From assembly GCF_022045235.1 (NCBI RefSeq), contig NW_027266269.1, positions 21,948,001-22,012,000 of the forward strand: a stretch of DNA of 64,000 nt. The letters are read 5' to 3'. The DNA is from Haliotis cracherodii. Its lineage: Eukaryota. The first letter of the stretch is position 1. Each line of letters opens with the position of its first letter. Made by a program: the position numbers and the translations under genes. Positions 16,880 through 63,805 of the stretch are shown here, in pieces. The notes under the pieces are model-generated. The model had not been told where the DNA came from, made no database searches, and saw only the letters and a list, made by a program, of their open reading frames with translations.

Positions 16880-17188
16880 TCAAGCTGCTGCAGTTGCAGC
16901 TTTTGTGGTGGGCTGGGCAGCGTTGATGTGTTCAAGGATCTCAGTCGTGTCCAAAATCTCTCCAGGTTCCAGCACATTCTTTGTAGCGTCATCTATACAG
17001 TAGCAAGTGCACATAGTGAACTCGCACCTGTTGCCTGTACAGGAATGACCGCAGTATTGCTTTAGCTCCATGGCGTTTTGGAATTCCCATTTCTCCCCTG
17101 GGTAAATTGCCGGTGGGCTAGGGTCTCCAGAAGATGACTGGCACCATGTGTTCCTCCTTGTGGGAGGACAGTTGGGGATTAAAGGATT
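16880..17188 (-). CDS. Exon 7 (terminal): 8-Cys module and stop
   Basis: Acceptor tgtgtccttttttcag|AAT (phase 0). Encodes NCPP...WCQ...[20 protein letters not shown]; TGA at 16882-16880. Confidence 0.82.
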   Translation of the reverse strand, partial: NPLIPNCPPTRRNTWCQSSSGDPSPPAIYPGEKWEFQNAMELKQYCGHSCTGNRCEFTMCTCYCIDDATKNVLEPGEILDTTEILEHINAAQPTTKAATAAA

Positions 17189-20100
17189 CTGAAAAAAGGA
17201 CACACATTATTTTGAGAGCACAATCGGGAAGATATTTAATTTCTGTTGGCATTTTCGTATGTCATAAAGACACAACAAACAACTGTGGCACCTACATTGT
17301 TACATTAATTTTGATTCCCAATATATGAAGTTGACGGTAGCCTCGGGACAATTTGGATCAATCCAGTGGGTTCCACTGTCGCACCGTAGACACGTTCATC
17401 CCGCATGGTTGTGATAGAGAACTTCTTAAAACACCCTCGTAAACCATAATTCACTCTGTCAAAATCGGTCATTGGAGTTGTTTTGTGCCACAATCAGCGC
17501 TATTGCAGTATGTGATGCTGACATTGAACAATGAATAGATTCTGGACCAGAGAGATACGTGTTTCATGTCAAGAGCAACGATCTCATGGGGCACCAGAAA
17601 TTTGAAAAAAATGAAAAAGTAAAATATTACAATTTACACTATTGGGCCAATGGACTAGTCATGAACAATACAACGAATTGCACCTCCTTATATCACACTC
17701 CAAAAATATCAAACACACACGAGTCATAAATGAGTGAGTGAGTAAGGTTGTACGCCGCATTTAGCAATATTCCAGCAACATCACGGCGGGGGACACAACA
17801 AATGAGGCTCGAACATCGAGTCTCCAGGTGGAGAATGGAACCCGGAACTTCGGCATGACCTGAGAACGCTTTAAAGGGGAAGTGTACACGCAAAAATCAC
17901 TTTACAAAAGTAGGATACGAAACTTAATATACACTAATTGTTTTTCACAGTGAAAGTTGGAAGCTCACAATAGTGTGAAAGTGATATGCCCTTATGAGGC
18001 CTTCGTTTAACGAGCGAAATAGGCCTGAGTTATCCCCCTTAGATTATGACGTAATTGGTGCCAATTCAACTGGGTCCCTGTCTATTCTCAACGCAAAAGA
18101 TGTCAAGGACCAGTTTGCGGTAAAACAACATGGTCAACGACACACTCCGGCGCAGTGGTGACTCAGCATAACACAATTCTGGCTGGCATCTGAGATGCTA
18201 GAATCACAAAACTGTACCTACACCACGTGAAGCGGCTCTAACAAAGCATGATGACGTCATAATGTTTATCAATTGGCACCAATGACGTCATATTGCAAGG
18301 GGCATAAGCCATGGTGTTTTTGTTATGGAAATAGAACACTTGGTAAATGTGAAAAATATAAATCGTTTTAGTGCAAAAAATATGTTAATTAAATATGATG
18401 TTTTTATATTTTTGTCTATGACACTTCTATGTTAACACATTTGATGTGGAAAAAGTACAAGAAAAAATGGTTCATTTCCGTGTGAACTTGCCCTTTAACC
18501 ACTTAGCTACCCAACCGCCCTCAACAACTGAAACTGCCATCCATAAAGCTTACAAAAGAAGTGACACTTACGACTGTAGTAGTGGTCGGTGCTTGGGTAG
18601 TCGTGAAAGGCACCGGAATGTTCCTGCTGATGACGTCAGCCAGAGGTGACTGGAGCAGCTGCTGAGCCCGCGACCCCCCAAGGGAGACCACTTGACGATA
18701 CAGACTGATCAGCTTGTTGATGGTGGCCGCCAGAAGGTTGTCATGAGTCTGGTGAAGCTGCTGTGGCTGGTGGGCATGGACGTTGTACACAGGAAGCGGC
18801 TGGATTGCTGGAGACGGCGCTGAACCTGTGTAAGGACAGAATGGCATCACCGTTGTGCTGAAGATTTTCACCGTATTTTGATGGTTAACTATATCCTTCT
18901 ACAGAATATTCACTTTTTGTGTAAGTTAATTGAAACATTCTACTGAGTATTCACGTCATACAGTAGGTTATCTGTAACATTTTGTTGAGTATTACGGTAT
19001 TGCAATGGTAAACTGTAACATTCTACAAGGAATTCACCGTATTGTGAAGGTTAACTGTATCCTTCTACAGAATATTCACTTTTTGTGTAAGTTAATAGAA
19101 ACATTCTACAGAGTATTCACGTCATACAGTAGGTTCCCTGTGACATTTTGTTGAGTATTACGGTATTGCAATGGTAAACTGTAACATTCTACAAAGTATT
19201 CACCGTATTGTGAAGGTTAAATACCCTTCTACAGAATATTCACTTTTTGTGTAAGTTAATAGAAACATTCTACATAGTATTCACGTCATACAGTAGGTTA
19301 TCTGTAACATTTTGTAGAGTATTACGGTATTGCAATGGTAAACTGTAACATTCTACAAAGTATTCACCGTATTGTGAAGGTTAAATACCCTTCTACAGAA
19401 TATTCACTTTTTGTGTAAGTTAATAGAAACATTCTACATAGTATTCACGTCATAGAGTAGGTTATCTGTAACATTTTGTAGAGTATTTACAGTATTACAA
19501 TGGTAAACTGTAACATTCTACAACGTATTCACCGTATTGGGAAGGTTAACTATCCTTCTACAGAATATTCACTTTTTGTGTAAGTTAATAGAAACATTCT
19601 ATTTACGTCATACAGTAGGTTATCTGTAACGTTTTGTGGAGTATTACGGTATTGCAATGATAAACTGTAACATTCTACAAAGTATTCACAATATTGTGTA
19701 GGTTAACGATACTATCTGTAGGTATTCACAGTATCATGTGGTCTAACAGTAACACATTGCACATTGTTTGGTTGTACTTCAATGGAGTATTCATCAATAT
19801 TTGATTCTGTCACTTTGAATTTGGCTGCTGATTGGGCGACATTTCTATTTTATTATTTCATGGCGAGATTGTCTAGAAACAACTGCTCATATTCATAAGA
19901 AATGTATGTTGTTTTAATTTTTCAAGTTTAAGTGTGAGAATAAGAGGAGGTAGTAATGTCTAGGTTGCATTGTGGTTATGACTTTAATGTCGTGTCAATC
20001 TCATTGTGTTGATCCTGTAAATACTACTACAGCTTTTGTAAATAACTTTATGGACCTGTGGAGATCCGGGGTAGAATAGGTCTTCAGTTACCCATGCTTG

Positions 20101-23100
20101 CCGTAAAAGGCGACTATGCTTGTCGTAAAAGGCGACTAACGGGATCGGTAGTCAGGATCGCTGACTTGGTCGATGAATGTCATCGTATCCCAATTGCGTG
20201 GATCGATGCTGATGATGTAATTCACTAGATTGTCTGGTCAAGACTCGATCATTTACAGACCGCCGTCATATGGCTGGAATATTGCCGAGTGCGACGTTAA
20301 ACCACCAACAAACAAACAAAGAATTTTATGACATGTCATCGTCAAACCATTGACAGCCAGTGTTTGGTAAGAGACTTGCGCCCAAGATTGTTAAAAATAA
20401 CATTTGTACCAAAAAGATACGAGAAACAAATTTGCCTCCGGTTTTACTCAAAAGAATAGTTATTCGCTAGAAATGTCTGATGGTCTGAAAAAATATGCTG
20501 TTAAGTTTTTTTAAATAGAATTGAAGCAGTAACGAAAATCATTTTCTGACTCCCCCAGAATATGTAGTCCCATACTAATTGTTGAAGCTGTGTTTTGCTT
20601 TACGGTTGTACACTTTGTAACAATGACTACACAATTAATATGAATGAAGTAGCATTCCACTTTCGAACAGAGACACTCGCATTTAGTACTTACCACCCTG
20701 TTGGCTCACTGAAGGGCTGTCCTGCTGAATGGGGGCCATGTACTGGCCGACACTTGTAGAAAGACTGGATGGGTACTGACTTCTTGGATACTGGTGGTTG
20801 AACTGGGTAAAACGTGTACCGGTCACTCCAGACTGAGAGACACGTTGGGTAGGATTAGGATAGCTTGCTGTAAACTGTTGGGTAGATGCTCCAGTTTGTT
20901 GGACAGTGTTGGCGTAGCTTCCCGTGTTGGACGGGATAGACGCAGTTGCTCCAGTCTGTTGGGCAGTGTTGATGTAGCTTCCCCTGTTGGACGGCACAGA
21001 CGCAGCTGCTCCAGTCTGTTGGGCAGTGTTGATGTAGCTTCCCGCGTTGGACGGCACAGACGCAGTTGCTCCAGTCTGTTGGGCAGTGTTGATGTAGCTT
21101 CCCGTGTTGGACGGGATAGACGCAGTTGCTCCAGTCTGTTGGACATAGTTGGTGTAGCTTCCCGTGTTGGACGGCACAGATGCAGTTGCTCCAGTCTGTT
21201 GGGCAGTGTTGGTGTAGCTTCCCGTGTTGGACGGGACATACACAGTTGCTCCAGTCTGTTGGGCAGTGTTGGTGTAGCTTCCCGTGTTGGACGGGACAGA
21301 CGCAGTTGCTCCAGTCTGTTGGGCAGTGTTGGTGTAGCTTCCCGTGTTGGACGGCACAGACGCAGTTGCTCCAGTCTGTTGGGCAGTGTTGGTGTAGCTT
21401 CCCCTGTTGGACAGGACCGGCGCAGTTGCTCCAGTCTGTTGGGCACTGTTGGTGTAGCTTCCCGTGTTGGACGGGACAGACGAAGTTGCTCCAGTCTGTT
21501 GGTCAGTGTTGGCGTAGCTTCCCGTGTTGGACGGGACATACACAGTTGCTCCAGTCTGTTGGGCACTGTTGGTGTAGCTTCCCGTGTTGGACGGGACAGA
21601 CGCAGTTGCTCCAGTCTGTTGGGCAGTGTTGGTGTAGCTTCCCGTGTTGGACGGCACAGACGCCGTTGCCCCGGTCTGTTGGACCGTGTTGGTGTAACTT
21701 CCCGTGTTGGACGGGACAGACGAAGTTGCTCCAGTCTGTTGGGCACTGTTGGTGTAGCTTCCCGTGTTGGACAGGACAGGCGCAGTTGCTCCAGTCTGTT
21801 GGGCAGTGTTGGTGTAGCTTCCCGTGTTGGACGGGACAGACGAAGTTGCTCCAGTCTGTGGGTCAGTGTTGGCGTAGCTTCCCGTGTTGGACGGGACATA
21901 CACAGTTGCTCCAGTCTGTTGGGCACTGTTGGTGTAGCTTCCCGTGTTGGACGGGACAGACGCAGTTGCTCCAGTCTGTTGGACAGTGTTGGTGTAACTT
22001 CCCGTGTTGGACGGCACAGACGCAGTTGCTCCAGTCTGTTGGACAGTGTTGGTGTAGCTTCCCGTGTTGGACGGCACAGACGCAGTTGCCCCGGTCTTTT
22101 GGGCAGTGTTGGTGTAACTTCCCGTGTTGGACGGGACAGACGAAGTTGCTCCAGTCTGTTGGGCAGTGTTGGTGTAGCTTCCCGTGTTGGACGGGACAGA
22201 CGAAGTTGCTCCAGTCTGTTGGGCAGTGTTGGTGTAGCTTCCCGTGTTGGACGGGACAGACGCAGTTGCTCCAGTCTGTTGGGCAGTGTTGGTGTAGCTT
22301 CCCGTGTTGGACGGGACAGACGCAGTTGCTCCAGTCTGTTGGGCAGTGTTGGTGTAGCTTCCCGTGTTGGACGGGACAGATGCAGTTGCTCCAGTCTGTT
22401 GGGCAGTGTTAATGTAGCTTCCCGTGTTGGACGGCACAGATACAGTTGCCCCGGTCTGTTGGTCAGTGTTGGTGTAGCTTCCCGTGTTGGACGGGACAGA
22501 CGCAGTTGCTCCAGTCTGTTGGACAGTGTTGGTGTAACTTCCCGTGTTGGACGGCACAGACACAGTTGCTCCAGTCTGTTGGGCAGTGTTGGTGTAGCTT
22601 CCCGTGTTGGACGGCACAGACGCAGCTGCTCCAGTCTGTTGGGCAGTGTTGGTGTAGCTTCCCGTGTTGGACGGGACAGACGCAGTTGCTCCAGTCTGTT
22701 GGACAGTGTTGGTGTAACTTCCCGTGTTGGACGGCACAGACACAGCTGCTCCAGTCTGTTGGGCAGTGTTGGTGTAGCTTCCCGTGTTGGACGGGACGGA
22801 CGAAGTTGCTCCAGTCTGTTGGGCAGTGTTGATGTAGCTTCCCGTGTTGGACGGGACAGACGCAGTTGCCCCGGTCTGTTGGGCAGTGTTGATGTAGCTT
22901 CCCGTGTTGGACGGCACGGACGCAGTTGCTCCAGTCTGTTGGACAGTGTTGGTGTAGCTTTCCGTGTTGGACGGCACAGACGCAGCTGCTCCAGTCTGTT
23001 CGGCAGTGTTGATGTAGCTTCCCGTGTTTGACGGCACAGACACAGTTGCTCCAGTCTGTTGGGCAGTGTTGGTGTAGCTTCCCGTGTTTGACGGCACAGA

Positions 23101-26100
23101 TGCAGTAGCTCCAGTCTGTTGGACATAGTTGGTGTAGCTTCCCGTGTTGGATGCAGCAGTTTCAGGTGCGGAGGTTGGACCATTATTTCCAGGAGCAATT
23201 ACAGTGGCTGCCACATAAGGTGTAATATTTACACTTGCAGTAGAAGCAATTTCAGGTTCGGCAGTTGGCCCTGTACTTCCAGATCCGCCAACATTGGTTG
23301 CCGTAACTGTTACAGAAGGTGTAGACTCAGCAGTAGGAGTGGTTTCAGGTTCGGCAGTTGGCCCTGCACTTCCGGATCCACCAACATTGGTTGCCGTAAC
23401 AGCCTCAGAAGCTGTAGTCTTGGCACTTGCAGCAGAAGCAGTTTCAGGTTCGGCAGATGGCCCTGTATTTCCAGATCCGCCAACATTGGTTGCCGTAGCT
23501 GCTACAGAAGGTGTAGTCTCAGCAGTAGAAGCAATTTCAGGTTCGGCAGTTGGCCCTGCACTTCCGGATCCGCCAACATTGGTTGCCGTAACTACTACAG
23601 TAGGTGTAGTCTCAGCAGTAGGAGTGGTTTCAGGTTCGGTAATTGGTCCGCCAACATTACTTGCAGTACCTGTCAATGCAGATGTAGAAGCTGTTCCAGG
23701 TGCGGACGTTGGAGCTAAGCTTCCAGTGGCACCAACATTGGTTGCAAGGACTACAGCATCAGACGCAGTGTAACCAGAATTGTTATTTGTGGTTCCCGAA
23801 GATGATGTTCCAATAGTATTTGTTAGAGAACCCTCATGCCCAGTATAGCCTATCAGTGTGTTAGAATTGACTCCTGAGACTGAATTACCCATACTATTAG
23901 CTGAAGCACCTGCTTCGGGTGGAGAGGTGGTGTCCCTGGTAGCCGTCACGCCAATATTAAAGACAGAGTTTGAACCTGATGTTGCTTGCTGGCCAGTGAA
24001 GGGAATAGCATTAGCATCAAGAACAATCTTCATTGTGTTCGAAACTGGAACCTCCACGTTAGAACCAGGAGCCCCTGGGTAGTAAACAGATTCAGCGTTG
24101 TTGGGAACAGGTGCCGAACTAGAAATAGGGGCTTCTCCAGACACTTTCGAAGCGGACTCTATATTACCAGACTGTGTGTTAGTGCCTGTGGAAGTTGAAC
24201 TGGCTCCATTTGTTGTAGTAATAGCGTTTGCTGTTTGTGTGTTTGAGACCGTGCCTCCACTAATTGCAGCAATATTACTGGTGTCAGCATTAACATTATT
24301 TACACCATCGAAAGTTGTTGGCGTGTTTGACCCACTGTTAGCTGTTCCCTCTCGTGTTGACTGAATGTAGAGAGAGTAAGCGGTTGAGCCAGTTGGAGAT
24401 GCTGCACCCGTAATTGTATTCCCAAACAAGACAGAACTGGTGGGGCCTGTGGCGTCATTACTGTTTGTAGCTGCTGGTTGCGTGGCAGCATTGATCGTTG
24501 TCGCAGCTTGTTGCGTGGCAGCTTGTTGTGTCGCAGCTTGTTGCGTGGCAGCTTGTTGTGTGGCAGCTTGTTGCGTGGAAGCATTGTTGGTTATTGCAGC
24601 TTGTTGCGTGGCAGCTTGTTGCGTGGCAGCTTGTTGCGTGGCAGCATTATTGGTTGTTGCAGCTTGTTGAGTGGCGTCATAACTGCCTGTGGCAGCTTGT
24701 TGCGTGGCAACATAGTTGGTTGTTGTAGCTTGTTGCGTGGCGTCATAACTGCCTGTGGCAGCTGGTTTAGTAGCAGCATTGTTGGTTATGGCAGCTGGTT
24801 GTGAGGCAGCGAAGTTGGTTGTTGCGGCTTGTTGCGTGGCAGCTTGTTGCGTGGCAGCATTATTGGTTGTCGCAGCTTGTTGTGTGGGGTCATAACTGCC
24901 TGTGGCAGCTTGTTGCATAGCGTCATTACTACCTATGGCAGCTTGTTGCGTGGCAACATAGTTGGTTGCTGCAGCTTGTTGAGTGGCGTCATAACTGCCT
25001 GTGGCAGCTGGTTGTGTGGTAGCATTGTTGGTTGTGGCAGCTGGTTGTGAGACAGCGATGTTGGTTGTTGCGGCTGGTTGTGTGGCAGCATAGTTTGTTG
25101 TTGCGGCTTGTTGCGTGGCAGCTTGTTGCGTGGCAGCATTATTGATTGTCGCAGCTTGTTGTGTGGGGTCATAACTGCCTGTGGCAGCTTGTTGCATAGC
25201 GTCATTACTACCTATGGCAGCTTGCTGCGTGGCAACATAGTTGGTTGCAGCTTGTTGTGTGGCGTCATAACTGCCTGTGGCACCTGGTTGTGTGGCAGTT
25301 TGTTGCGTGGCAGCATAGTTGGTTGTTGCAGCTTGTTGCGAGGCGTCACTACCTGTGGCAGCTTGCTGCGTGGCAGCATAGTTGGTTGTGGCAGCTTTTT
25401 GCGTGGCGTCATTACTACCTATGGCAGCTTGTTGCGTGGAAACAAAGTTGGTTGTTGCAGCTTTTTGGGTGGCGTCATAACTGCCTGTGGCAGCTTGTTG
25501 CGTGGCGTCATTACTACCTGTGGCAGCTTGTTGCGCGGCAACATATTTGGTTGTTGCAGCTTGTTTCGTGGCGTCATAACTGCCTGTGGCAGCTGGTTGT
25601 GTGGCAGCATTGTTGGTTGTTGCAGCTGACTGGGTTGTGTCATAACTGCTAGTGACAGCCGATCCGGTGACGTCACTGACAGTGACAACCGGTTGTGTGG
25701 CAGTGTTGATTGTTTGCCCTGGCGCCACAGTAGATAAAGAAGGATGAACAGTTGAATCAGTCAGTGGCAGGGAAGCTGCACTTGAATGAAGTAAACTCGA
25801 AATATGACTTGGGGATGCATAAACTACCTCTGGACTACCTTGAGATTGTGAAGTGAAGGCACGTGTCGCTTCCGTGGCATGCGTTGTTACTAATATTTCG
25901 CCGGAAGGTAGAGGAGCATTTGCAGTGTTTCCTGCCATCGCTGTATGCGTTACTGTCACAGACCCTGAGCCCGATTCAAAGGTAGGTGTCTGGGTGATCT
26001 TAGATGCATCGGAGGCAGCAGCAGCTGTTGGTGGTTGGTTTGATGTGAAGAAACTACTGGATCCTGACTTGCTTAAATCGGTACGCGATGCTATTGTTTG

Positions 26101-53100: not shown

Positions 53101-53239
53101 GAGGATAAAGAGCCGGAGAGAGTCTCTGTAACAAGTAGTACGCCAGCGGGAGGTCCATATCTAAAAGAAACTCAGGGGCTTCAGCCGCTTCAACAGCAGG
53201 GGGAGGCTCTGTTGGTGCTGGAGTTGTTGTTCCTGCTGT

Positions 53240-53271
<32 letters not shown>

Positions 53272-56200
53272 GAGTTGTTTTCCCTGTTCCCATTGCTGCG
53301 GCCGTTAATGTTGCTGATGTTGTTGGCTCTGCTGTTTGTGGTGTGGGAGTTGTTGTCCCTATTGTGGATGTTGCAGCTGTTGGTGACGCAACTGATATTG
53401 TTGTTGTTGCTGATGTTGTAGTTTTGGAGAGGGAGTTGGTTCCATTATCCAGGGGTGACCTCTGAGTGCCGATTACATACAGTGAGGTACCGGGCTCTAT
53501 GGACTGAGCAAGCTTAACGGATGCTCCAACGTGATCTCGTCGGCCTGTTTGATCGGCGACAGATTCCACTGTCACTATGCTGGATGCGTCTGGATATGCA
53601 TGATGAGATTCAGGCTGCCCAGAAAGCCCAAGGGTAGCCTGTTCATTTGAACGAGTGGTGACTTCAACAATTGATTCTGCACTCTGGTATCTAGCCATAG
53701 GAAGAGATGTGATCTGAACATGCATCTGAGGCACCTTACTACTTGCAACAAATTGATGTGTAGAAGAAGCTGGTGGAGCCTCGTGATTGGCGACTGGTAG
53801 GGGAGTGACTCCACCAGGAGCGTGTAGAACCTGGTTACTGCCGGCTTCAAAAGGTGCTTGCGCGGCCTCGTGACTGGTGACTTGAAGAGGCGTAACTTCA
53901 ACAGGTCTTTGCACACCTTCGAGACTGGCAGGTAGTGATGGCACATTAACATGAGACTGTACACCTTCGTGTCTGACAGGTAGTGATGATACTTCAGCAG
54001 GTGCGTGTCCAGCGTCCTGGAAAGTGACGGGTAGTGATGCCACATTAACATGAGACTGTACACCTTCGTTTCTGGTGACAGGTAGTGATGATACTTCAGC
54101 AGGTGCGTGTCCAGCCTCTTGACTGACAGTGACAGGTAGTGATGATACTTCAACATGAGACTGTACACCTTCGTGTCTGGTGACAGGTAGTGATGATACT
54201 TCAGCAGGTGCGTGTCCAGCCTCTTGACTGACAGTGACGAGTAGTGATGATACTTCAACATGAGACTGTACACCTTCGTGTCTGACAGGTAGTGATGGTA
54301 CTTCAGCAGGTGCGTGTCCAGCCTCCTGACTGACAGTGACAGGTAGTGATGATACTTCAACATGAGACTGTACACCTTCGTGTCTGACAGGTAGTGATGA
54401 TACTTCAACATGAGATTGTACACCTTCGTGTCTGGTGACAGGTAGTGATGATACTTCAACATAAGATTGTACAATTTCGTGTCTGGTGACAGGTAGTGAT
54501 GATACTTTAGCAGGTGCGTGTCCAGCCTCCTGACTGAAAGTGACGGGTAGTGATGCCACATTAACATGAGACTGTACACCTTCGTGTCTGGTGACAGGTA
54601 GTGATGATACTTCAGCAGGTGCGTGTCCAGCCTCCTGACTGAAAGTGACGGGTAGTGATGCCACATTAACATGAGACTGTACACCTTCGTGTCTGGTGAC
54701 AGGTAGTGATGATACTTCAGCAGGTGCGTGTCCAGCCTCCTGACCGACAGTGACAGGTAGTGATGGCACATTAACATGAGATTGTACACCTTCGTGTCTG
54801 ACAGTTAGTGGTGATATTTCAGCAGGTGCGTGTCCAGCCTCCTGACTGAAAGTGACAGGGAGTGATGATACTTCAACATGAGACTGTACACCTTCGTGTC
54901 TGATAGGTAGTGATGGTACTTCAGCAGGTGCGTGTCCATCCACCTGACTGACAGTGACAGGTAGTGGTGATATTTCAGCAGGTGCGTGTCCAGCCTCCTG
55001 ACTGAAAGTGACAGGGAGTGATGATACTTCAACATGAGACTGTACACCTTCGTGTCTGGTGGCAGGTAGTGATGATACTTCAGCAGGTGCGTGTCCAGCC
55101 TCCTGACTGAAAGTGACAGGTAGTGATGATACATCAACACCAGACTGTACATCTTCGTATCTGGTGACAGGTAGTGATGATACTTCGGCAGGTGCGTGTA
55201 CAGCCTCCTGACTGACAGTGACGGGAAATGATGGCACATTAACATGAGACTGTACACCTTCGTGTCTGGTGACACGTAGTGATGATACTTCAGCAGGTGC
55301 GTGTCCAGCCTCCTGACTGACAGTGACGAGTAGTGATGGTACTTCAACATGAGACTGTACACCTTCGTGTCTGGTGGCAGGTAGTGATAATACTTCAGCA
55401 GGTGCGTGTCCAGCCTCCTGACTGAAAGTGACAGGTAGTGATGGCACATTAACATGAGATTGTTCACCTTCGTGTCTGGCAGGTAGTGGGGGCACTTCGG
55501 CAGCCTCGTGACGGACTGTGGCGGGTAGTGTTGTTACTTCGACAGGTGCGTCTACGACGTAATGACTCTCCGCCGGTATTGATGGTATTTCAGCAGGTAC
55601 ATGTCCAACCTTCTGATTGGCGAAAGGTAGAGATGATGCTTCAACAGGAGCGTGTACAACGTAGTGACTCTGGACAGGTGTTGATGGTATTTCAGCAGGG
55701 GCGTGTACAACGTTCTGATTGGCGAAAGGTAGAGATGATGCTTCAACAGGAGCGTGTACAACGTAGTGACTCTGGACAGGTGTTGATGGTATTTCAGCAG
55801 GGGCGTGTACAACGTTCTGATTGGCGAAAGGTAGAGATGATGCTTCAACAGGAGCGTGTACAACGTAGTGATTCTGGACAGGTGTTGATGGTATTTCAGC
55901 CGGGACGTGTACAACGTTCTGATTGGCGAAAGGTAGAGATGATGCTTCAACAGGAGCGTGTACAACATAGTGACTGCTGGCATGTGTTGACGGTATTTCA
56001 GCCAGTGGGTGTACAACGTTCTGACTAGCGACATACACAGATGGTACTTCAACAGGTGCGTATACAATCTTTTGACTGGCAACAGGCGGTGACAATATTT
56101 CAGCAGGTGCGTGTACAATCTTTTGACTGGCGACAGATACAGATGGTACTTCAACAGGCGCTAGTATAAAGTTTTGACTAGCAACAGCTGGTGACGATAC

Positions 56201-59200
56201 TTCAGCAGGCGCATGTGCAATCGTTTGAATGGCAACAGGTGTTGATGATACTTCAACAGGCGCGTCTGCAACGTTCTGACTGACGACAGATACAGATGGT
56301 ACTTCAACAGTTCCGTGTACAATCTTTTGACTTGTGACAGGTGGTGACGACACTTCAACAGTTCCGTGTACAATCTTTTGACTTGCGACAGATGGTGACG
56401 CTATTTCAGCAGGTGTGTGTACAATCTTTTGACTTGCGACAGGTGGTGACGACACTTCAAAAGGTCCGTGTACAATCATTTGACTTGCGACAGGTGGTGA
56501 CGCTATTTCAGCAGGTGCGTGTACAGTCTTTTGACTAGCCATGGGTGGTGACGACACTTCAGCTGGTGTGTGTACAATCTTTTGACTTGCGACAGGTGGT
56601 GACGAGACTTCAGCAGGTACTTGTACAATGTTGTCATTGGCGAGAGTCGGAGACGATCCCTCAGCATGTTCGTGTCCAACGTTGTGACTGGCGACAGGTG
56701 GTGACGATACTTCAGCAGGTGCATGTACAATCTTTTGACTTGCGACAGGTAGTGACGATACTTCAGCAGGTTCGTGTCCAACGTAATGACTGGCGACAGG
56801 TGGTGACGATACTTCAGCAGGTTCGTGTCCAACGTTATGACTGGCGACAGGTGGTGACGATACTTCAGCAGGTTCGTGTCCAACGTTATGACTGGCGACA
56901 GGTGGTGACGATGCTTCAGCAGGTTCGTGTCCAACGTTATGACTGGCGACAGGTGGTGACGATACTTCAGCAGGTGCGTGTACAATCTTTTGACTTGCGA
57001 CAGGTAGTGACGATACTTCAGCAGGTTCGTGTCCATCGTAATGACTGGCGACAGGTGGTGACGATACTTCAGCAGGTGCATGTACAATCTTTTGACTAGC
57101 AACAGGCACAAATGGCACTTCCGCAGTTACCTGTACAATGTTGTCCTTGGCGACAGTAGGAGACGATACCTCAGCAGGTGTGTGTACAATCATTTGACTT
57201 GCGACAGGTGGTGACGGCACTTCAACAGGTGCGTGTACAATCTTTTGACTTGCGACAGGTGGATACGATACTTCAGCAGGTGCGTGAACAATCTTTTGAC
57301 CTTCGACAGGTGGCGACGATACTTCAGCAGGTGTGTGTACAATCGTTTGACTTGCGAAAGGTGGTGACGACACTTCAGCAGGTGCGTGTACAATCTTTTG
57401 ACTTGCGATTGGTGGATACGATACTTCAGCAGGTGCGTGTACAATCGTTTGACTTGCGACAGGTGGTGACGATACTTCTACAGGTGCGTGTACAATCTTT
57501 TGACTTGCGACAGGTGGTGACGATACTTCAGCAGGTGCGTGAACAATCTTTTGACTTGCGACAGGTAGTGACGATACTTCAGCAGGTTCTTGTCCAACGT
57601 TATGACTGGCGACAGGTGGTGACGATACTTCAGCAGGTGCATGTACAATCTTTTGACTAGCAACCGGCACAAATGGCACTTCAGCAGGTGCATGTACAAT
57701 GTTGTCCTTGGCGACCGTCGGAGAAGATACCTCAGTAGGTGTGTGTACAATCATTTGACTTGCGACAGTCGGTGACGGCACTTCAACAGGTGCATGTACA
57801 ATCTTTTCACTTGCGACAGGCGATGACGCTATTTCAACAGGTGCGTGTACAATCTTTTGATTTGCGACATGTGGTGACGATACTTCAGCAGGTGCGTGTA
57901 CAATCGTTTGACTTGCGAAAGGTGGTGACGACACTTCAACAGGTGCGTGTACAATCGTTTGACTTGCGAAAGGTGGTGACGATACTTCAGCAGGTGCATG
58001 TACAATCTTTTGACTAGCAACAGGCACAAATGGCACTTCAGCAGGTACCTGTACAATGTTGTCCTTGGCGACAGTCGGAGAAGATACCTCAGCAGGTGTG
58101 TGTATAATCATTTGACTTGCGACAGGTGGTGAAGACACTTCAACAGGTGCGTGTACAATCTTTTGACTTGCGATTGGTGGATACGATACTTCAGCAGGTG
58201 CGTGAACAATATTTTGACTTGCGACAGGTGGTGACGATACTTCTACAGGTGCGTGTACAATCTTTTGACTTGCGACAGGTGGATACGATACTTCAGCAGG
58301 TGCGTGAACAATCTTTTGACTTGCGACAGGTGGATACGATACTTCTACAGGTGCGTGAACAATCTTTTGACTTGCGACAGGTGGATACGATACTTCAGCA
58401 GGTGCGTGTACAATCTTTTGACTTGTGACAGGTGGTGACGATACTTCAGCAGGTGCGTGAACAATCTTTTGACTTGCGACAGGCGATGACGCTATTTCAG
58501 CAGGTGCGTGAACAATCTTTTGACTTGCGACAGGTAGCGACGATATTTCAGCAGGTGTGTGTACAATCTTTTGACTTGCGATAGGTGGATACGATACTTC
58601 AGCAGGTGCGTGTACAATCATTTGACTTGCGACAGGTGGTGAAGACACTTCAACAGGTGCGTGTACAATCTTTTGACTTGCGATTGGTGGATACGATACT
58701 TCAGCAGGTGCGTGTACAATCATTTGACTTGCGACAGGTGGTGAAGACACTTCAACAGGTGCGTGTACAATCTTTTGACTTGCGACAGGTGGATACGATA
58801 CTTCAGCAGGTGCGTGAACAATATTTTGACTTGCGACAGGTGGTGACGATACTTCTACAGGTGCGTGTACAATCTTTTGACTTGGGAAAGGTGGTGACGA
58901 TACTTCTACAGGTGCGTGTACAATCTTTTGACTTGCGACAGGTGGAGACGATACTTCAGCAGGTGCGTGTACAATCGTTTGACTTGCGAAAGGTGGTGAC
59001 GATACTTCAGCAGGTGCGTGAACAATATTTTGACTTGCAACAGGTAGTGACGATACTTCAGCAGGTGCGTGAACAATCGTTTGACTTGCGACAGGTGGTG
59101 ACGATACTTCTACCGGTGCGTGTACAATCGTTTGACTTGCGACAGGCGATGACGCTATTTCAGCAGGTGTGTGTACAATCGTTTGACTAGCGACAGGTAG

Positions 59201-62200
59201 CGACGATACTTCAGCAGGTCCGTGTACAATCTTTTGATTTGCGACAGGTAGTGACGATACTTCAGCAGGTTCGTGTCCAACGTTGTGACTGGCGACAGGT
59301 GGTGACGATACTTCAGCAGGTGCATGTACAATCGTTTGACTAACAACAGGCACAAATGGCACTTCAGTAGGTACTTGTACAATGTTGTCATTGGCGACAG
59401 GTGGAAACGATACTTCAGCAGGTGCGTGTACAATCGTTTGACTAGCGACAGGTAGAGACGATACTTCAGTAGGTGCGTTTACAATCGTTTGAATAGGGAC
59501 AGGTAGCGACGATACTTCAGAAGGTGCGTATACAATCGTTTGACCTGCGACGGGTGGTGACGATGCTTCAGCAGGTGTGTGAACAACGTTGTGGCTAGCG
59601 ACAGGTGGTGACGATGCTTCAGCAGGTGTGTGAACAACGTTGTGGCTAGCGACAGGTGGTGACGATGCTTCAGCAGGTGTGTGTACAACCTTGTGACTTG
59701 CGACAGGTGGTGTCGATACTTCAGCAGATGTGTGTACAACCTTGTGGCTAGCGACAGGTGGTGACGACACTTCAGCAGATATGTATACAACCTTGTGGCT
59801 AGCGACAGGTGGTGACGACACTTCAGCAGATATGTGTACAACCTTGTGGCTAGCGACAGGTGGTGACGATACTTCAGCAGGTGTGTGTACAACGTTGTGA
59901 CTAGCGACTGATGGTGACGATGCTTCAGCAGATGTGTGTACAACGTTGTGACTAGCGACTGATGGTGACGATGCTTCAGCAGATGTGTGTACAACCTTGT
60001 GGCTAGCGACAGGTGGTGACGATACTTCAGCAGGTGTGTGAACAACCTTGTAACTAGCGACAGGTGGTGTAGATACTTCAGCAGGTGTGTTTTCAACCTT
60101 GTGACTGGCGACAGGCGGTAGTGGTACTTCAATAGTTGCTTGTAGGTCTTGTTGACTGGTCGTAGGAAGAGGTTGTACGGCAGGCGAGTGTTTAACAGAT
60201 TGTTGAAGTCCCTGAATATTGTCGACAGGTAGAGATGTAACCCCAGCTCTGGTCTGGGATCCCATGTGGCTGACTGGGAGGTCTGTGACTCCCACCTGGG
60301 ATTGTATTGGTTGTAGACGTTGATGACCTTCCTGGTTTAATGTAGTCTCTGATTTGATGCTGGATGCAGGATGCACAGGAACAGTCTCAGGTATTGGTGT
60401 CGTGTTGGCACTTTGGGGCTCTGGTTGTATCTGTGTCGTCCCTGGAGGCACTTGAGGCGGCCTGGCGTTGTTGTCAGACATGGCGTGAGTATGAGGCAGA
60501 GATTGGAGGCCACTTGGCGGCTGGGAGTCAGTATATGGATCGCTGGGTCCTAGAGGTATGCTTGTTACTGCCTTACTTGGCATTGGTGTCGTGTTGGCAC
60601 TTTGGGGCTCTGGTTGTGTCCCTGGAGACACTGGTGGCGGCCTGGCGTTGTTGTCAGACTTGGCGTGTGTATGAGACAGAGATTGGAGGTCACTTGGCGG
60701 CTGGGAGTCAGTATATGGATCGCTGGGTCCTAGGGGTATGCTTGTTACTACCTTACTAGGCATTGGTGTCATGTTTGCACTTAGGGGCTCCGGTTGTGTC
60801 CCTGGAGGCACTGGTGGCGGCCTGGCGTTGTTGTCAGACTTGGCGTGAGTATGAGACAGAGATTGGAGGCCACGTAGCGGCTGGGAGTCAGTATATGGAT
60901 CGCTGGGTCCTAGAGGTATGCTTGTTACTACCTTACTTGGCATTGGTGTCGTGTTGGCACTTTGGGGCTCTGGTTGTGTCCCTGGAGGCACTGGTGGCGG
61001 CCTGGCGTTGTGGTCAGACTTGGCGTGAGTATGAGACAGAGATTGGAGGCCACTTAGCGGCTGGGAGTCAGTATATGGATCGCTGGGTCCTAGAGGTATG
61101 CTTGGTACTGCCTTACTAGGCATTGATGTCGTGTTGGCACTTTGGGGCTCTGGTTGTGTCTGTGTCGTCCCCGGGTGCACTTGAGGCGGTCTGGCGTTGT
61201 GGTCAGACTTGGCGTGAGTATGAGACAGAGATTGGAGGCCACTTGGCGGCTGGAAGTTAGTATAAGGATCGCTGGGTCCTAGAGGCACTGGCATGCTAGT
61301 TACTGCCTTACTAGGCATTGGTAGCACCGGTGATTGAGGAGGCACATGTGATTGTAACATAGGGGAAGGTGCTGCCGTTGTTCTAGAAGACTGACTAGAT
61401 AGGCTAGTGATTGGAGAAGCTGGAGGCGTAATTCGGTTTTCAGTACTTCCTAGTGTCACTCCAGAATCAGATGCAGCGTTCAATGACGGGGTGGCAGTAT
61501 CCACGGGCACAAATGCTGTTTCGGGAGTAGTACTAGGAATGATAGGTACCGCTGACGTAAAACCTGGGTTGAGATTTAAGGAAGCACCAATGTGTGTTTC
61601 GGCCTGATCTACAGGGGTAACTGCTGCACTGACACCGGGTATCGTGGTACCCTTTGGAGTGGGGTTCTCTCCAGGTATTTTAAGTCCAAGTCCTTTCGAG
61701 GATTTGCGAGCAGCAGCTTTAGTAGACAGATAATGCAAACTTCGTACAATGGATTTGATTGCAGCTGGCGAAGCATTTGGAAATTTAACAGACACTTGTT
61801 GAAATATGCGTTGAATTTGTCCAGAAAGAGGGGCAACTTTGGAGCTTGTGACAATCCTTCTAGTATTACCCCTATTCTCAGCAACAGCCAATTGTTTTGA
61901 TGGAGCTTGCACATAATTATCAACCCTTTTGGGTGTTGGTGGTTCTGATGGCGTTTGCACATTATTATACGTCCTTGTAAATGTCGATTGCTTCGATGGA
62001 GCTTGCACATACATGTCCGTCGTTTTAGGTGGCCCTGTCTCTGATGGAGCTTGCACATAAGGGTACGCCATTTTTGGTGTCAATGGCTCTGATGGCGTTT
62101 GCACATAACCATTCGTCCTTGTTGTTGTCGATAGCTTTGATGGAACTTGTACATAACTGTCCGTCATTTTTGGTGTCGATGGCTCTGTTTGAGCTTGCAC

Positions 62201-63553
62201 ATAAGTGTTCATCCTTTTAGGTGTCGATGGTTTTGATTGTGCTTGAGCGTAATTATTAATCGTGTTTGGTGTAATTGGGATTGACGGAGCTTTCACATAA
62301 TTATTAATCCTATTTCGTGTCGACATAGTCCTAGACATATCACCAGGTAGTTTTCTGCTTCTCTTTGTAGATAATGGGTTAACTGAATTCTCATTCGAGT
62401 TTGAAAACGCCTGTTCAGCAAACATGTTTCGTCCATTGCCATGGAAGTCGATATCTCCAAGTTGCGTTGCCAATGTTTCACTTTGTATCCCATTCCGTCG
62501 TCTTGTGGCTACCTTCTGTCTATTCAAGTTCATAGCTTTTGACTTTGCCTGTGGAGGGACCTGGGTTCCTAAACGCACTGGTCTGGTATTAGCACGTGAA
62601 TTGGGAGATGGTAGCCTTGTTGAAGCGGATGATAGTCCACGTTGTGATGGAATCTTGATAGATGAAGGGTTCCCAACCAGCGCAGGTCTCCGAGCTCTCC
62701 CAGCTGGTTGGGAAACATCAGATCTCCCCTTAAAACCATTTGCATTCTTACGTTGTTCAGGAGTGGCATTTGTCCTTGGTCTTATGAAACCCGAATTAGC
62801 ATTAGCCCTACTTGGGAACCGAAAACGCCGTGGAGACTTTATCTCAGTACCATTTGGAGACGGCTCTTTGTGTTCAGGTTCTGAAACTTGCGGACGCATT
62901 TTGTTGACTGACTGTCTGGTGTTAGTCCTTCTTGCTGAGGGCCTAACATTTCTGAGAGGAACTTGTGTCTTCTTACCTTGTTGCCTCCTCAGCTGACTAC
63001 TTCTCAACATGGCCCTCCTCCGCGTCTCCCGTACAGCCTGTCTACGCCTTGAGGCGACATCGTTAACAACACGTCCACGTACAACTGGTCTTGATGTCAA
63101 GCGACTGCTTGTTCTTTGGGCTGTTCTTGTGGCTGTTCTTGTGGCTGTTCTTGTGGCTGTTCTTGGGGATGTTCTTTGGGCTGTTCTTGGGGCTGTTCTT
63201 GGGGCTGTTCTTGGGCCTGTTCTAGTGTTGACTCCACTAACGAAATTTTCTCTTCGGCGTCGTTGATCAATTCGTTGCTGTGACGACCGCATATGTTGAC
63301 CAGCCCTTTGTTTCGAGGCGCTTCTGATTTCTGAATCAACATCTTCATTCCGAGTTTGGCCAGTCTCAGTTTTTCCCTTTTCTGCGGTGAATCTACTCGG
63401 TGTACCTTGGGGTGGATTAAATCTTGCGGTAACAGATCCGGGTCCAAATGCACTGTTTGACCTTTCTGTGCCTGGCCATCTTCGCCCAGGGTATTGGGCG
63501 TAGCACGCGCGTAGCACGAGCAGAACGCATGCGACAGCGCCCAGCACATGCAT
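16880..63553 (-). CDS. Giant secreted multi-block low-complexity (mucin-like/structural) protein, 7 coding exons, predicted 10,676 aa
   Basis: Six GT-AG introns read from the sequence with matching phases (0,1,0,0,1,0). Exon lengths 12852+73+5828+2820+9895+254+309 = 32031 nt, divisible by 3. Signal-peptide-like N-terminus; TGA at 16882-16880. Extra small symmetric exons cannot be excluded. Confidence 0.82.
17731..18521 (-). mobile_element. Family A SINE split by a TTAA-specific MITE
   Basis: Tail and body at 17731-17870; 5' A-box part at 18499-18521. Confidence 0.8.
17875..18494. mobile_element. Kolobok-like non-autonomous DNA transposon
   Basis: TTAA TSD at 17871-17874 and 18495-18498; imperfect TIR aggggaagtgtacacgcaaaaat / atttccgtgtgaacttgccct; internal inverted repeat near 18043 and 18271. 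Confidence 0.8.
18572..18825 (-). CDS. Exon 6 (254 nt): includes amphipathic segment [19 protein letters not shown]
   Basis: Acceptor ttctgtccttacacag|GT (phase 1); donor GTC|gtaagt (phase 0). A second in-frame donor TTT|gtaagc lies 18 nt further on. Confidence 0.8.
18865..19735. repeat. Intronic minisatellite, about 165-bp unit x5, composed of about 33-bp subrepeats
   Basis: ttcaccgtatt recurs at about 18867, 19033, 19199, 19363 and 19528. Confidence 0.9.
20053..20320 (+). mobile_element. SINE-like element, family C (no tRNA head; structured 5' end; (AAAC)n tail)
   Basis: Homologous copy at 47246-47514; 3' fragments at 6140-6208 and 14860-15005; tail shared with families A and B. Confidence 0.8.
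20694..30588 (-). CDS. Exon 5 (9,895 nt): Gly/Ser/Thr, SQSG, QQAAT and 20-aa [20 protein letters not shown] repeat blocks
   Basis: 3148-aa ORF plus 153 open codons upstream, checked by hand. Acceptor tttctctctttacttatag|GTA (phase 0); donor G|gtaagt (phase 1). Confidence 0.88.
20900..23150 (-). repeat. Coding 60-bp tandem repeat (20 aa), about 37 copies
   Basis: Rows align exactly at a 60-bp period; unit [20 protein letters not shown]. Confidence 0.95.
32110..34929 (-). CDS. Exon 4 (2,820 nt): Thr/Ser-rich, two Cys-containing helical motifs
   Basis: 926-aa ORF extended 18 codons upstream. Acceptor ttttatcgccactgtag|GAT (phase 0); donor CTT|gtacgt (phase 0). Confidence 0.83.
35025..36166. 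repeat. Intronic 51-bp minisatellite, about 22 highly similar copies
   Basis: Unit gcgatgtatcggcacatatgctggtaccttcatcaagcttacattttcaaa. Confidence 0.95.
37435..37605 (+). mobile_element. Family A SINE (diverged)
   Basis: ggggcggtgggg... head, ggttcgattcc B-box, (ACTC)n tail. Confidence 0.85.
38200..38429 (+). mobile_element. 3' part of a family D SINE
   Basis: Matches 48020-48200, including the (CA)n tract and (CACCT)n tail. Confidence 0.75.
39093..39271. mobile_element. Tc1/pogo-type MITE with TA TSD
   Basis: TA|cagtaaactacggttgtaacgaac ... gttcgttataaccgtagtttactg|TA. Confidence 0.88.
39624..39880 (-). mobile_element. tRNA-derived SINE, family B
   Basis: Colinear with 5881-6118; B-box GGTTCGAATCC; (ACTC)n tail. 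Confidence 0.75.
40168..45995 (-). CDS. Exon 3 (5,828 nt): Ala/Thr/Asp, 27-aa and 8-aa Thr/Ala/Gly repeat blocks
   Basis: 1936-aa ORF. Acceptor tcttctgtttcccag|GT (phase 1); donor ACT|gtaagt (phase 0). Confidence 0.88.
41530..43200 (-). repeat. Coding 81-bp tandem repeat (27 aa, [27 protein letters not shown]), about 20 copies
   Basis: cttgaacagtggaagtaccc recurs every 81 bp. Confidence 0.95.
46609..47124 (+). mobile_element. pearl/CvA-like (Helentron-associated) non-autonomous element
   Basis: Starts aacaagag followed by the palindrome gtgctctgagagcac; internal diverged repeats (atattctctggaaactg x2); (ACGG/ACAG)n microsatellite at 47044-47070; 3' hairpin atcccc...ggggat. Confidence 0.65.
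47246..47514 (+). mobile_element. SINE-like element, family C
   Basis: Colinear with 20053-20320; (AAAC)n tail. Confidence 0.8.
47851..48200 (+). mobile_element. Full-length tRNA-derived SINE, family D (Meta/RUDI-like core), with 18-bp TSD
   Basis: A-box tggtctagtgg; B-box ggttcgatccc; core gtcataccaaa...aaaagatggtacttg...tggcgctcagcattaaaggg; TSD ctcaccttttcgcgaacg at 47833-47850 and 48201-48218. Core name is from memory. Confidence 0.85.
48341..48413 (-). CDS. Exon 2, 73-nt micro-exon ([24 protein letters not shown]+G)
   Basis: Acceptor ttatcgttttctacag|AAC and donor CAAG|gtatgt. Phase 0 in, phase 1 out, exactly bridging the exon 1 donor and exon 3 acceptor. S/T/G/A-rich like the rest of the protein. 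Confidence 0.82.
50487..50595. repeat. 16-bp minisatellite (gaaatcaataatgact) about 7 copies
   Basis: Directly visible tandem repeat about 100 nt into intron 1. Confidence 0.9.
50702..63553 (-). CDS. Exon 1 (12,852 nt): signal peptide, Arg-rich head, Pro/Ser repeats, His-Val-Pro-Glu 17-aa repeats, His/Tyr/Met repeats
   Basis: Lies in the 4335-aa ORF. ATG at 63553 starts [19 protein letters not shown]|QYP (hydrophobic core, small residues at -3/-1). Donor AAG|GTACGT at 50702/50701, phase 0. Confidence 0.88.
55560..60110 (-). repeat. Coding 51-bp tandem repeat (17 aa, [17 protein letters not shown]), about 90 copies
   Basis: Visible in both DNA and translation of exon 1. Confidence 0.95.
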
Positions 63554-63669
63554 ATTTGCGCTGGTTCCCGAATCGGTGGTATATTTCAGTAGATATTTTG
63601 TGCTCGGGAAATACAGTGTGCACTTGACCACTAACTCAGGAGAAAACAAAGTGACCAATGTAAACAACA

Positions 63670-63805
63670 CTATAAATACTATACCTCACAAGACCATCAA
63701 TCATGCTCACGTTGCAAAGACGCAATCAATAATACATGTTAGGGGAAAGAAACAATGAAACGTAAGCCCCGAACATGAATGACGAATCTCACCATTGTGA
63801 CGTCA
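63670..63805 (-). promoter_or_regulatory. Candidate proximal promoter of the giant gene (TATTTATA element and CRE palindrome TGACGTCA)
   Basis: Minus-strand TATTTATA near 63678-63671, about 120 nt upstream of the ATG; perfect TGACGTCA at 63798-63805. Short motifs only. Confidence 0.3.

What the first reader, a model, noticed from the sequence alone, without database searches (positions are those of the whole stretch)
16880..63553. One 47-kb gene encoding a ~10,700-aa secreted 'block-copolymer' protein
Seen: the four huge minus-strand ORFs and three small exons join through six canonical GT-AG introns whose phases all match, giving 32,031 nt / 10,676 aa from a signal peptide to a Cys-rich C-terminus. 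The chain is a series of more than a dozen distinct repeat blocks: RTA(P/T); 16-aa YVQAPS; 60-aa Pro/Ser; 17-aa His/Val/Pro; HEGVQSH; 29- and 30-aa His/Tyr/Met; AADTT; 27-aa; AAGTTTSQ; GSGSTT; SSQSGTA; QQAAT; and the 20-aa NTGSY repeat. Established: gel-forming mucins carry VWD/C8/TIL/CK domains and membrane mucins carry SEA/TM domains. I see none of these here. Inference: an uncharacterised, roughly 1-MDa extracellular material protein (pedal mucus or glue, periostracum/shell matrix, radula or egg coat). Automated annotation would probably fragment it or mask it as repeats.
Basis: partly seen in the sequence, partly recalled or inferred. Interest (0 to 1): 0.9.

Follow-up and report, generated by a model that had tools for sequence, protein, structure and literature searches.

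The report
Giant orphan mucin-like secreted protein gene
A single-copy, seven-exon gene in a mollusc genome appears to encode a 10,676-residue (about 1.06 MDa) secreted protein made almost entirely of different tandem-repeat blocks. It has no recognisable domain and no detectable relative, so it is a new but not unexpected domain-less mucin-like protein, and its expression and splicing could not be tested here.

Summary
On the minus strand, seven exons (63553-50702, 48413-48341, 45995-40168, 34929-32110, 30588-20694, 18825-18572, 17188-16880) join through six GT-AG introns. They give 32,031 nt and 10,676 codons with one stop, at the end.

- **Splice evidence:** every donor reads GTA[A/C/T]GT. 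Each sits 3-16 codons before the frame closes.
- **Micro-exon:** the 73-nt exon that restores phase is the only Ser/Thr/Ala/Gly-rich candidate in its intron.
- **Repeats:** arrays cover 67% of the protein. All periods are multiples of 3.
- **Topology:** the only hydrophobic segment is the N-terminal signal peptide.
- **Domains and relatives:** no Pfam domain at E<=1, no VWD anywhere on the contig, and no credible homologue in any protein search. Every non-repetitive part tested is single-copy.
- **Host:** a mollusc, shown by two hemocyanin genes of eight units each.

Best reading: an orphan, domain-less secreted mucin-like polymer. It has an Arg-rich head (pI 12), His/Val/Pro and Tyr/Met/His blocks, about 6,400 residues of Thr/Ser/Ala/Gly repeats and an 8-Cys tail. 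Domain-less mucins of this size are known in Drosophila, so this is a new member of a known kind. Interest is moderate. The scan had noted parts of this stretch before.

The parts
50702..63553 (-). Exon 1, 12,852 nt, aa 1-4284. ATG at 63553; donor AAG|GTACGT after 50702.
63494..63553 (-). Signal peptide ([20 protein letters not shown]), the only hydrophobic segment of the whole protein.
62294..63493 (-). Arg-rich cationic head, aa 21-420, pI 12, net charge about +63. It includes the RTA(P/T) 4-aa repeats (63115-63214).
61898..62311 (-). 48-nt (16-aa) YVQAPS-type repeat, about 8 copies.
60389..61322 (-). 180-nt (60-aa) Pro/Ser repeat, 5.1 copies.
53929..60119 (-). His/Val/Pro block: 51-nt (17-aa) unit x 88.8 copies (55589-60119), then a compound 105-nt unit with RHEGVQSH (53929-55482). 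There are 91 H-x3-E motifs in aa 1141-3210.
50805..52951 (-). Tyr/Met/His blocks: 87-nt (29-aa) x 9.5 copies and 99-nt (33-aa, mixed with 159-nt) repeats.
48341..48413 (-). 73-nt micro-exon ([24 protein letters not shown]). Acceptor TTTTCTACAG|, donor AAG|GTATGT. It restores the reading phase between exon 1 and exon 3.
40168..45995 (-). Exon 3, 5,828 nt. Holds the AADTT-type 15/30-nt array (43819-45758), the 81-nt (27-aa) x 21 array (41531-43239) and the 24-nt (8-aa AAGTTTSQ) x 38 array (40456-41376). It also has one copy of the LARLLL-AGL-PC motif.
35018..36163 (.). 51-nt minisatellite, 22.5 copies at 96% identity, inside intron 3. It lacks a good acceptor and has weak copies on two other contigs. 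Taken as intronic, not coding.
32110..34929 (-). Exon 4, 2,820 nt (phase 0-0), the least repetitive large exon. It starts with the second LARLLL-AGL-PC motif.
20694..30588 (-). Exon 5, 9,895 nt. Holds the GSGSTT 18-nt x 98 array (27749-29523), the SSQSGTA 21/42-nt array (26345-27140), the QQAAT-type 33-nt array (24449-25627), a 93-nt array (23211-23646) and the NTGSY 60-nt (20-aa) x 37.8 array (20887-23151).
18572..18825 (-). Exon 6, 254 nt, a unique sequence with no repeats.
16880..17188 (-). Exon 7, 102 codons plus TGA. It carries 8 of the protein's 13 Cys (C-x8-C ... C-x3-C-x4-C-x4-C-x-C-x-C). AATAAA signals lie 501-1046 nt downstream.

Best explanation
This is one single-copy, seven-exon, 46.7-kb gene of a mollusc. 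It encodes a 10,676-residue secreted protein without a membrane anchor. The protein is an orphan, domain-less mucin-like polymer.

Shown:
- The exon model, its phases and the single terminal stop.
- The signal peptide and the absence of any other hydrophobic segment.
- The absence of known domains and of detectable relatives.
- The block composition.

Inferred:
- The Thr/Ser/Ala/Gly-rich repeats make up about 6,400 residues and reach 63% Ser+Thr. They are densely O-glycosylated and form an extended, hydrated chain.
- The 8-Cys C-terminal tail and the three internal Cys link chains by disulfides.
- The Arg-rich N-terminal head (net about +63) binds polyanions. These could include the net-anionic body of neighbouring chains (about -330), giving a self-associating extracellular gel or coating.
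- The His/Val/Pro and Tyr/Met/His blocks may add metal-mediated or oxidative cross-links.
For: Gene model:
- The exons join to 32,031 nt with one terminal stop.
- All six donors are GTA[ACT]GT, a hexamer that occurs only 42 times on this strand of the 64-kb window. Each of the five donors that end a long open frame lies 3-16 codons before that frame closes, and the acceptors lie 0-24 codons after it opens.
- The chance of such a hexamer in the last 50 nt of five frames is about 4e-8 (my arithmetic).
- The micro-exon is the only Ser/Thr/Ala/Gly-rich candidate among 1,196 AG..GT candidates in its intron.

Coding signal:
- Exons have 45-56% GC and strong strand skew; introns have 35-43% GC.
- All repeat periods are multiples of 3.
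- Variation among repeat copies is higher at third codon positions in several arrays, and pN/pS is 0.22-0.69 in five of six arrays.

One transcript rather than several:
- Only exon 1 has an ATG followed by a signal peptide.

Mucin-like composition:
- Ser+Thr is 30.3% and Pro 7.8% overall, and repeats cover 67% of the length. This meets the compositional criteria of PMC2515642.

Orphan status:
- No Pfam hit.
- No VWD on contig C6.
- No true homologue of the tail, the head or exon 4.
- Single copy in the genome.

Host:
- A mollusc.
Against:
- No transcript-derived protein carrying exon 7 exists among about 15 billion proteins.
- Glycosylation is only inferred from composition.
- Many C-terminal blocks have almost no proline (0-1%). 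By the Drosophila scheme these would be 'mucin-related' rather than classical PTS repeats (PMC2515642).
- The N-terminal 4,284 residues have only 18-25% Ser+Thr and look more like a structural protein than a mucin.
- The 8-Cys tail folds with low confidence (pLDDT 51).
- The copy-to-copy constraint test is weak. Other frames sometimes score as low, and one array scores above 1.
Confidence: 0.6

Rival explanations
1. The gene is the same, but the product is a load-bearing or curing biomaterial protein rather than a hydrated mucus polymer. Examples are an adhesive or pedal glue, periostracum or shell organic matrix, an egg capsule or coat, or radular matrix. In this reading the His/Glu and Tyr/Met/His blocks drive metal-coordination or quinone-type cross-linking, and the cationic head binds a surface or mineral.
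For: - There are about 2,070 residues with 91 H-x3-E motifs.
- A 780-residue block has up to 11% Tyr and about 7-8% each of Met and His.
- The N-terminal domain has pI 12.
- The architecture is block-wise.
- Two domain-less secreted repeat-protein genes lie just upstream. Rapidly evolving novel repetitive proteins are typical of mollusc mantle secretomes (PMC1676022).
Against: - Sixty percent of the chain is Thr/Ser/Ala/Gly-rich and net acidic, which fits glycosylated spacer better than a hard material.
- There are no chitin-binding, tyrosinase-partner, collagen or other matrix domains.
- There is no tissue information.
Confidence: 0.22
2. The open frames do not all belong to one mRNA. They could be two or more transcription units, or the dominant isoforms could skip giant exons. 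Exon 4 is phase 0-0 and could be skipped. Retention of intron 5 would end the protein at ...QQGGKY.
For: - No junction was observed at the RNA level.
- The exon 1 to exon 3 link depends on a 73-nt exon found by search.
- Exon 4 is symmetrical.
Against: - Exons 3, 4 and 5 open directly at acceptor sites. None has a Met followed by a signal peptide.
- All phases match.
- The donors sit just before each frame ends.
- The micro-exon has matching composition and the best splice signals in its intron.
Confidence: 0.12
3. The locus is a silent relic, or its arrays are mis-assembled, so the 10,676-residue product does not exist as written.
For: - There are no homologues and no database trace.
- Long, 92-96% identical arrays are hard to assemble.
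Against: - The frame stays open for 10,676 codons across at least 17 different arrays and about 3,500 non-repeat codons.
- The splice signals are intact.
- The window has no N.
- Third-position excess variation appears in several arrays.
Confidence: 0.05

Closest known systems
[quoted passage not shown] 2008, PMC2515642)
   Same: Secreted proteins defined only by long Ser/Thr(/Pro)-rich tandem repeats. Several have no conserved domain. Sizes range from 300 to 23,000 residues. The repeats are poorly conserved and lineage-specific.
   Different: No sequence relationship was found. This protein strings together at least 17 unrelated arrays. It also has a 4,284-residue N-terminal part with only 18-25% Ser+Thr: an Arg-rich head, a His/Val/Pro block and Tyr/Met/His blocks.
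Vertebrate 'orphan' mucins (MUC7, MUC22 and lineage-specific ones; PMC9417175)
   Same: Mucin function is carried by exonic repeats, without orthology to the gel-forming or membrane-bound families. Their evolution is independent and lineage-specific.
   Different: The secreted orphans such as MUC7 are far smaller. MUC16 is also counted as an orphan in PMC9417175 and is of comparable size, but it is membrane-bound. The glycosylation of the present protein is only inferred.
Gel-forming mucins (MUC2/5AC/5B/6/19 type)
   Same: A giant central exon or exons of tandem repeats. A secreted protein with a Cys-containing C-terminus that could link chains.
   Different: No VWD, C8, TIL or CTCK domain was found. 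No VWD was found on the whole contig, while VWD genes do exist elsewhere in this genome. The 8-Cys tail is too compact for a cystine knot (my reading of its spacing).
Membrane mucins (MUC1/4/16 type)
   Same: Size (MUC16 is of the same order) and repeat content.
   Different: No SEA domain and no transmembrane segment.
Modular mollusc matrix proteins (Lustrin A, mucoperlin; recalled from memory, mentioned in PMC1676022)
   Same: A mollusc-specific, secreted, block-wise design with Gly/Ser-rich and basic segments. Mucoperlin is mucin-like.
   Different: Lustrin A's repeated Cys-rich and Pro-rich modules and its inhibitor-like C-terminus are absent. This protein is 7-10 times larger. No similarity was detected.

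Membership tests
Gel-forming mucins | N-terminal VWD-C8-TIL assemblies | tested here: not met
   Pfam at E<=1 on every exon found nothing. No VWD match anywhere on contig C6 in a six-frame search, while 36 matches lie on other contigs.
Gel-forming mucins | C-terminal cystine-knot (CTCK) dimerisation domain | tested here: not met
   Exon 7 has 8 Cys but no Pfam hit at E<=1. It has no PDB relative and no homologue among 1.84 billion representatives.
Membrane-bound mucins | SEA domain plus a transmembrane segment | tested here: not met
   No SEA in Pfam. The only 19-residue window with Kyte-Doolittle mean above 1.6 is the signal peptide.
Mucins by composition (Syed et al. 2008 / Lang et al. thresholds, PMC2515642) | Ser+Thr at least 20% and Pro at least 5%, and at least 4 repeats | tested here: met
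   Ser+Thr is 30.3% and Pro 7.8% overall, with hundreds of repeat units.
Mucins by composition (Syed et al. 2008, PMC2515642) | [quoted passage not shown] | tested here: inconclusive
   Repeats cover 67% of the length. The richest Ser/Thr arrays have 0-1% Pro, which is 'mucin-related' in that scheme. The Pro-rich arrays have only 18-25% Ser+Thr.
Mucins (functional definition) | Dense O-glycosylation of the repeats | not testable with these tools
   This needs glycoproteomics or staining of the purified product.
Any expressed protein-coding gene | A spliced transcript covering the six junctions | not testable with these tools
No transcript-derived protein was found in the collections.
Secreted proteins | An N-terminal signal peptide right after the start codon | tested here: met
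   [19 protein letters not shown]|Q has a hydrophobic core and small residues at -1 and -3. This is a manual reading; no SignalP was available.

The most novel reading that the evidence does not exclude
This is a lineage-specific, domain-less 1-MDa 'block copolymer'. Its pI-12 Arg-rich head, net-anionic glycosylated body, 2,000-residue H-x3-E block and Tyr/Met/His blocks together program the self-assembly of a mollusc biomaterial such as a reversible glue or a tough coating. The assembly would combine charge-driven condensation with metal or oxidative curing. That would be a new class of material protein, not just another mucin.
Probability: 0.15. Interest if true: 0.7.

Novelty: new member of a known kind. 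Interest (0 to 1): 0.4.

Why it matters
If expressed as modelled, this would be among the largest known polypeptides, and it would be a mollusc protein with no relatives in current databases. Mucins and other repeat-rich secreted proteins are systematically missed by short-read transcriptomics and shotgun proteomics (PMC10475054). A complete gene model from a contiguous assembly therefore gives a concrete search target for mollusc mucus, glue or matrix proteomes. The ordered set of chemically distinct blocks is also a natural template for studying how sequence blocks set material properties. It does not open a long-standing question by itself.

Tried and rejected
- **Homologues.** All searches were blank:
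  - exon 7 by word search;
  - exon 7 by phmmer against 1.84 billion representatives, where the only hits were WD40-repeat proteins and one repeat protein, judged spurious after Pfam and inspection;
  - exon 7 in the ESM Atlas and in PDB sequences, where only Protein A constructs with no significant stretch appeared;
  - exon 1 residues 1-720;
  - exon 4 residues 1-420;
  - exact look-up of seven ORF variants.
- **Structure of exon 7.** The single-sequence model had pLDDT 51, too poor for a fold search, so none was run.
- **Homodimer test of exon 7.** The tool returned no answer, neither support nor evidence against. It is not used as evidence.
- **Array at 35018-36163 as a possible extra exon.** Rejected. 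It has no pyrimidine-rich acceptor, its copies are 96% identical with no third-position signal, and it has weak copies on contigs C7 and C15. A cassette exon cannot be fully excluded.
- **Paralogues.** None were found for the head, exon 6, exon 7 or the LARLLL motif.
- **RNA genes.** Rfam and tRNA scans of the window found nothing.
- **Hexapep match in exon 5.** E 0.0011 and below the cut-off; a low-complexity artefact.
- **Copy-to-copy pN/pS.** It supports the frame only weakly, because shifted frames sometimes score as low.
Full report
**What is in the sequence**

The window has no N. On the minus strand there are four very long stop-free frames: 50666-63685, 40153-46038, 32098-34929 and 20686-30588. 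There are also two short ones, 18524-18898 and 16883-17206. These stretches have 45-56% GC and a strong strand skew. The DNA between them has 35-43% GC and no skew.

Tandem Repeats Finder reports at least 17 separate arrays inside the long frames. Their periods are 15/30, 18, 21/42, 24, 33, 48, 51, 60, 81, 87, 93, 99, 102, 105 and 180 nt, and every one is a multiple of three. A short 12-nt RTA(P/T) run in the Arg-rich head falls below the TRF score used but is plain in the translation. Arrays cover 67% of the deduced protein. The remaining third, about 3,500 codons, is non-repetitive and still open in the same frame. Chance or a stop-free satellite unit cannot explain that.

**The exon model**

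Reading the frame ends gives consensus sites at each border.
- Six obvious exons sum to 31,958 nt. They leave a phase clash between the first and second giant exon.
- I searched the 4.7-kb interval for AG...GT segments that start in phase 0 and have a length of 1 modulo 3. This recovers a 73-nt exon at 48341-48413 with acceptor TTTTCTACAG| and donor AAG|GTATGT.
- Among 1,196 stop-free AG..GT candidates of any phase in that interval, the only ones rich in Ser/Thr/Ala/Gly/Pro/Gln are variants of this one locus.
- With it, the seven exons give 32,031 nt, 10,676 codons and a single stop at the very end.

Support for splicing:
- All six donors read GTA[A/C/T]GT.
- That hexamer occurs 42 times on this strand of the window, about once per 1.5 kb.
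- Each of the five donors that end a long frame sits 3-16 codons before that frame closes. The acceptors sit 0-24 codons after it opens.
- By my arithmetic, the chance of such a hexamer in the last 50 nt of five frames is about 4e-8.
- The four junctions that needed no search each match in phase.
- Only exon 1 begins with an ATG followed by a signal peptide. The other giant exons open directly at acceptors and have no such start.

I take the single-gene model as well supported in silico, at about 0.8.

It was assembled only inside my own scripts, to count length, stops, composition, hydropathy and mass. Every search was made exon by exon, by reference.

**Coding constraint**

- In the 51-, 24- and 72-nt arrays, variation among copies is clearly higher at third codon positions.
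- pN/pS against the array consensus is 0.22-0.69 in five of six arrays in the model frame.
- Shifted frames sometimes score as low, and one array with indels scores above 1. This is supporting evidence, not decisive.

**The protein**

The mature chain has 10,656 residues, 1,063 kDa and pI 5.4. The only hydrophobic segment is the N-terminal signal peptide, so the protein is secreted and has no membrane anchor.

In order along the chain:

| Residues | Feature |
|---|---|
| 21-420 | Arg-rich head with RTA(P/T) repeats; pI 12, net about +63 |
| 415-552 | 16-aa YVQAPS repeats |
| 744-1055 | 60-aa Pro/Ser repeats |
| 1141-3210 | His/Val/Pro block: 17-aa units x 89, then a 35-aa compound unit; 91 H-x3-E motifs, against 1 elsewhere |
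| 3535-4250 | Tyr/Met/His repeats of 29 and 33 aa |
| about 4285-10489 | Thr/Ser/Ala/Gly-rich arrays on the micro-exon and exons 3-5: AADTT, 27-aa, [14 protein letters not shown] (63% Ser+Thr), SSQSGTA, QQAAT-type and the 20-aa NTGSY unit x 38 |
| 10490-10676 | Unique tail on exons 6 and 7, carrying 8 of the 13 Cys |

- Everything after about residue 1140 is net acidic.
- Two of the three internal Cys sit in a recurring motif, (P)xLARLLLxAGLxPCxE. The two copies share 62% identity over 26 residues, E 2e-6. The motif occurs nowhere else in the genome.

**What it is not**

- Pfam finds nothing at E<=1 in any exon, apart from a sub-threshold low-complexity Hexapep match.
- A six-frame search of the whole 1.18-Gb genome finds 36 VWD matches, and none is on this contig. 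Hidden gel-forming-mucin exons next to the locus are therefore excluded.
- The 16.9 kb downstream of the stop holds only transposon remnants.

**Relatives**

None were found.
- The exon-7 tail has no word-sharing candidate.
- Against 1.84 billion representatives it has only spurious WD40-repeat hits.
- It has no Atlas neighbour and no PDB relative.
- The first 720 residues and the least repetitive 420 residues of exon 4 also give nothing. These two searches see only proteins of 0.55-1.75 times the query length.
- None of seven ORF variants is in the 15-billion-protein collection.
- Within the genome, the head, exon 6, exon 7 and the LARLLL motif are all single-copy.

**Host**

The genome carries two tandem genes, each with eight molluscan-hemocyanin beta-sandwich units (PF14830; 16 matches in two clusters on contig C78, and 0 in the control genomes). 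The organism is therefore a mollusc. The eight-unit, two-gene layout fits a gastropod, by my own knowledge. The species was not identified.

**Expression**

This is the gap. 

Exon references that overlap part of that stretch had to be used afterwards for Pfam and the homologue searches, and I state this for transparency.

**How it most likely works**

Shown: a secreted chain without a membrane anchor, disordered-type composition, blocks of distinct chemistry, and Cys confined to the tail and three internal sites.

Inferred: the Thr/Ser-rich 60% of the chain is O-glycosylated and extended, as in mucins. By the compositional criteria used for Drosophila the protein qualifies: Ser+Thr is 30.3% against a threshold of 20%, Pro is 7.8% against 5%, and repeats cover well over a third of the length (PMC2515642). 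However, the richest Ser/Thr arrays lack proline, which that scheme calls 'mucin-related'. The 8-Cys tail would link chains, and the cationic head would bind polyanions, including the anionic bodies of other chains. The tail's fold is uncertain (pLDDT 51).

The main functional rival, at about 0.22, is a curing or load-bearing material protein. It draws on the H-x3-E block, the Tyr/Met/His blocks and the basic head.

**Comparison and novelty**

- Domain-less secreted mucins and mucin-related proteins of 300-23,000 residues are known in Drosophila. [quoted passage not shown]
- 'Orphan' mucins that arise independently through exonic repeats are an accepted category (PMC9417175).
- Mollusc secretomes are rich in rapidly evolving novel repetitive proteins (PMC1676022).
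- Snail mucins are known to escape transcriptomics and proteomics because of their repeats and glycans (PMC10475054).

The locus is therefore a new member of a known kind: unusually large, unusually heterogeneous in its blocks, and without relatives. A specialist would not be startled by it. Interest is 0.4.

Parts of this same stretch were already noted by the scan's first readers: the micro-exon, the Cys tail, the His block and the internal-Cys motif. I re-tested those notes here.

Noticed in passing
L009:2754-7589 (G000:C6:22018754-22023589, minus strand) and L010:3507-4172 (G000:C6:22028507-22029172, minus strand): There are two more secreted, domain-less proteins 7 and 17 kb upstream on the same strand. 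One is a 1,612-aa single ORF with signal peptide MWTIVILACFLYSVDG, a Pro/His-rich start and then 20-aa GTMTAGSGTVNSAYPMGTQT repeats. The other is an open frame of at least 222 aa, of which about 200 aa follow the signal peptide MWNFVIIACLIDGSLG. Their N-terminal parts are weak paralogues (28% identity, E 3e-9) and neither has a Pfam hit. The region may be a small cluster of secreted repeat-protein genes.
   Followed up: partly
window 35018-36163: A 51-nt minisatellite, 22.5 copies at 96% identity, lies inside intron 3. It is open in several frames on both strands. Copies at 64-69% identity lie on contigs C7 (about 35.60 Mb) and C15 (about 4.55 Mb).
   Followed up: partly
window 18867-19707: A 164-nt tandem repeat, 5.1 copies at 93% identity, lies in intron 5 just upstream of exon 6.
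   Followed up: no
window 10866-11705 (minus) and 2841-3964 (plus): Downstream of the gene there is a Tc1/mariner-type transposase ORF (279 aa) and fragments that look like a reverse transcriptase. This is my reading of the translations. The 93-aa ORFs at 13809-14090 (+) and 15533-15814 (-) share their last 53 residues exactly, which suggests an inverted duplication.
   Followed up: no
G000:C78:7546637-7561658 and 7602322-7622521: Two tandem molluscan hemocyanin genes, each with eight Haemocyan_bet_s units. They identify the genome as a mollusc.
   Followed up: partly
G000:C9:16015741-16082865: A cluster of VWD matches in two similar groups about 60 kb apart. It is a candidate tandem pair of canonical gel-forming-mucin or FCGBP-like genes in the same genome.
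   Followed up: no
window 34810-34929 and 43555-43638 (minus): A recurring 26-aa motif, (P)xLARLLLxAGLxPCxE, carries two of the three internal cysteines. It is found only in this gene. A looser third Cys-bearing amphipathic segment lies near aa 6870-6895.
   Followed up: partly
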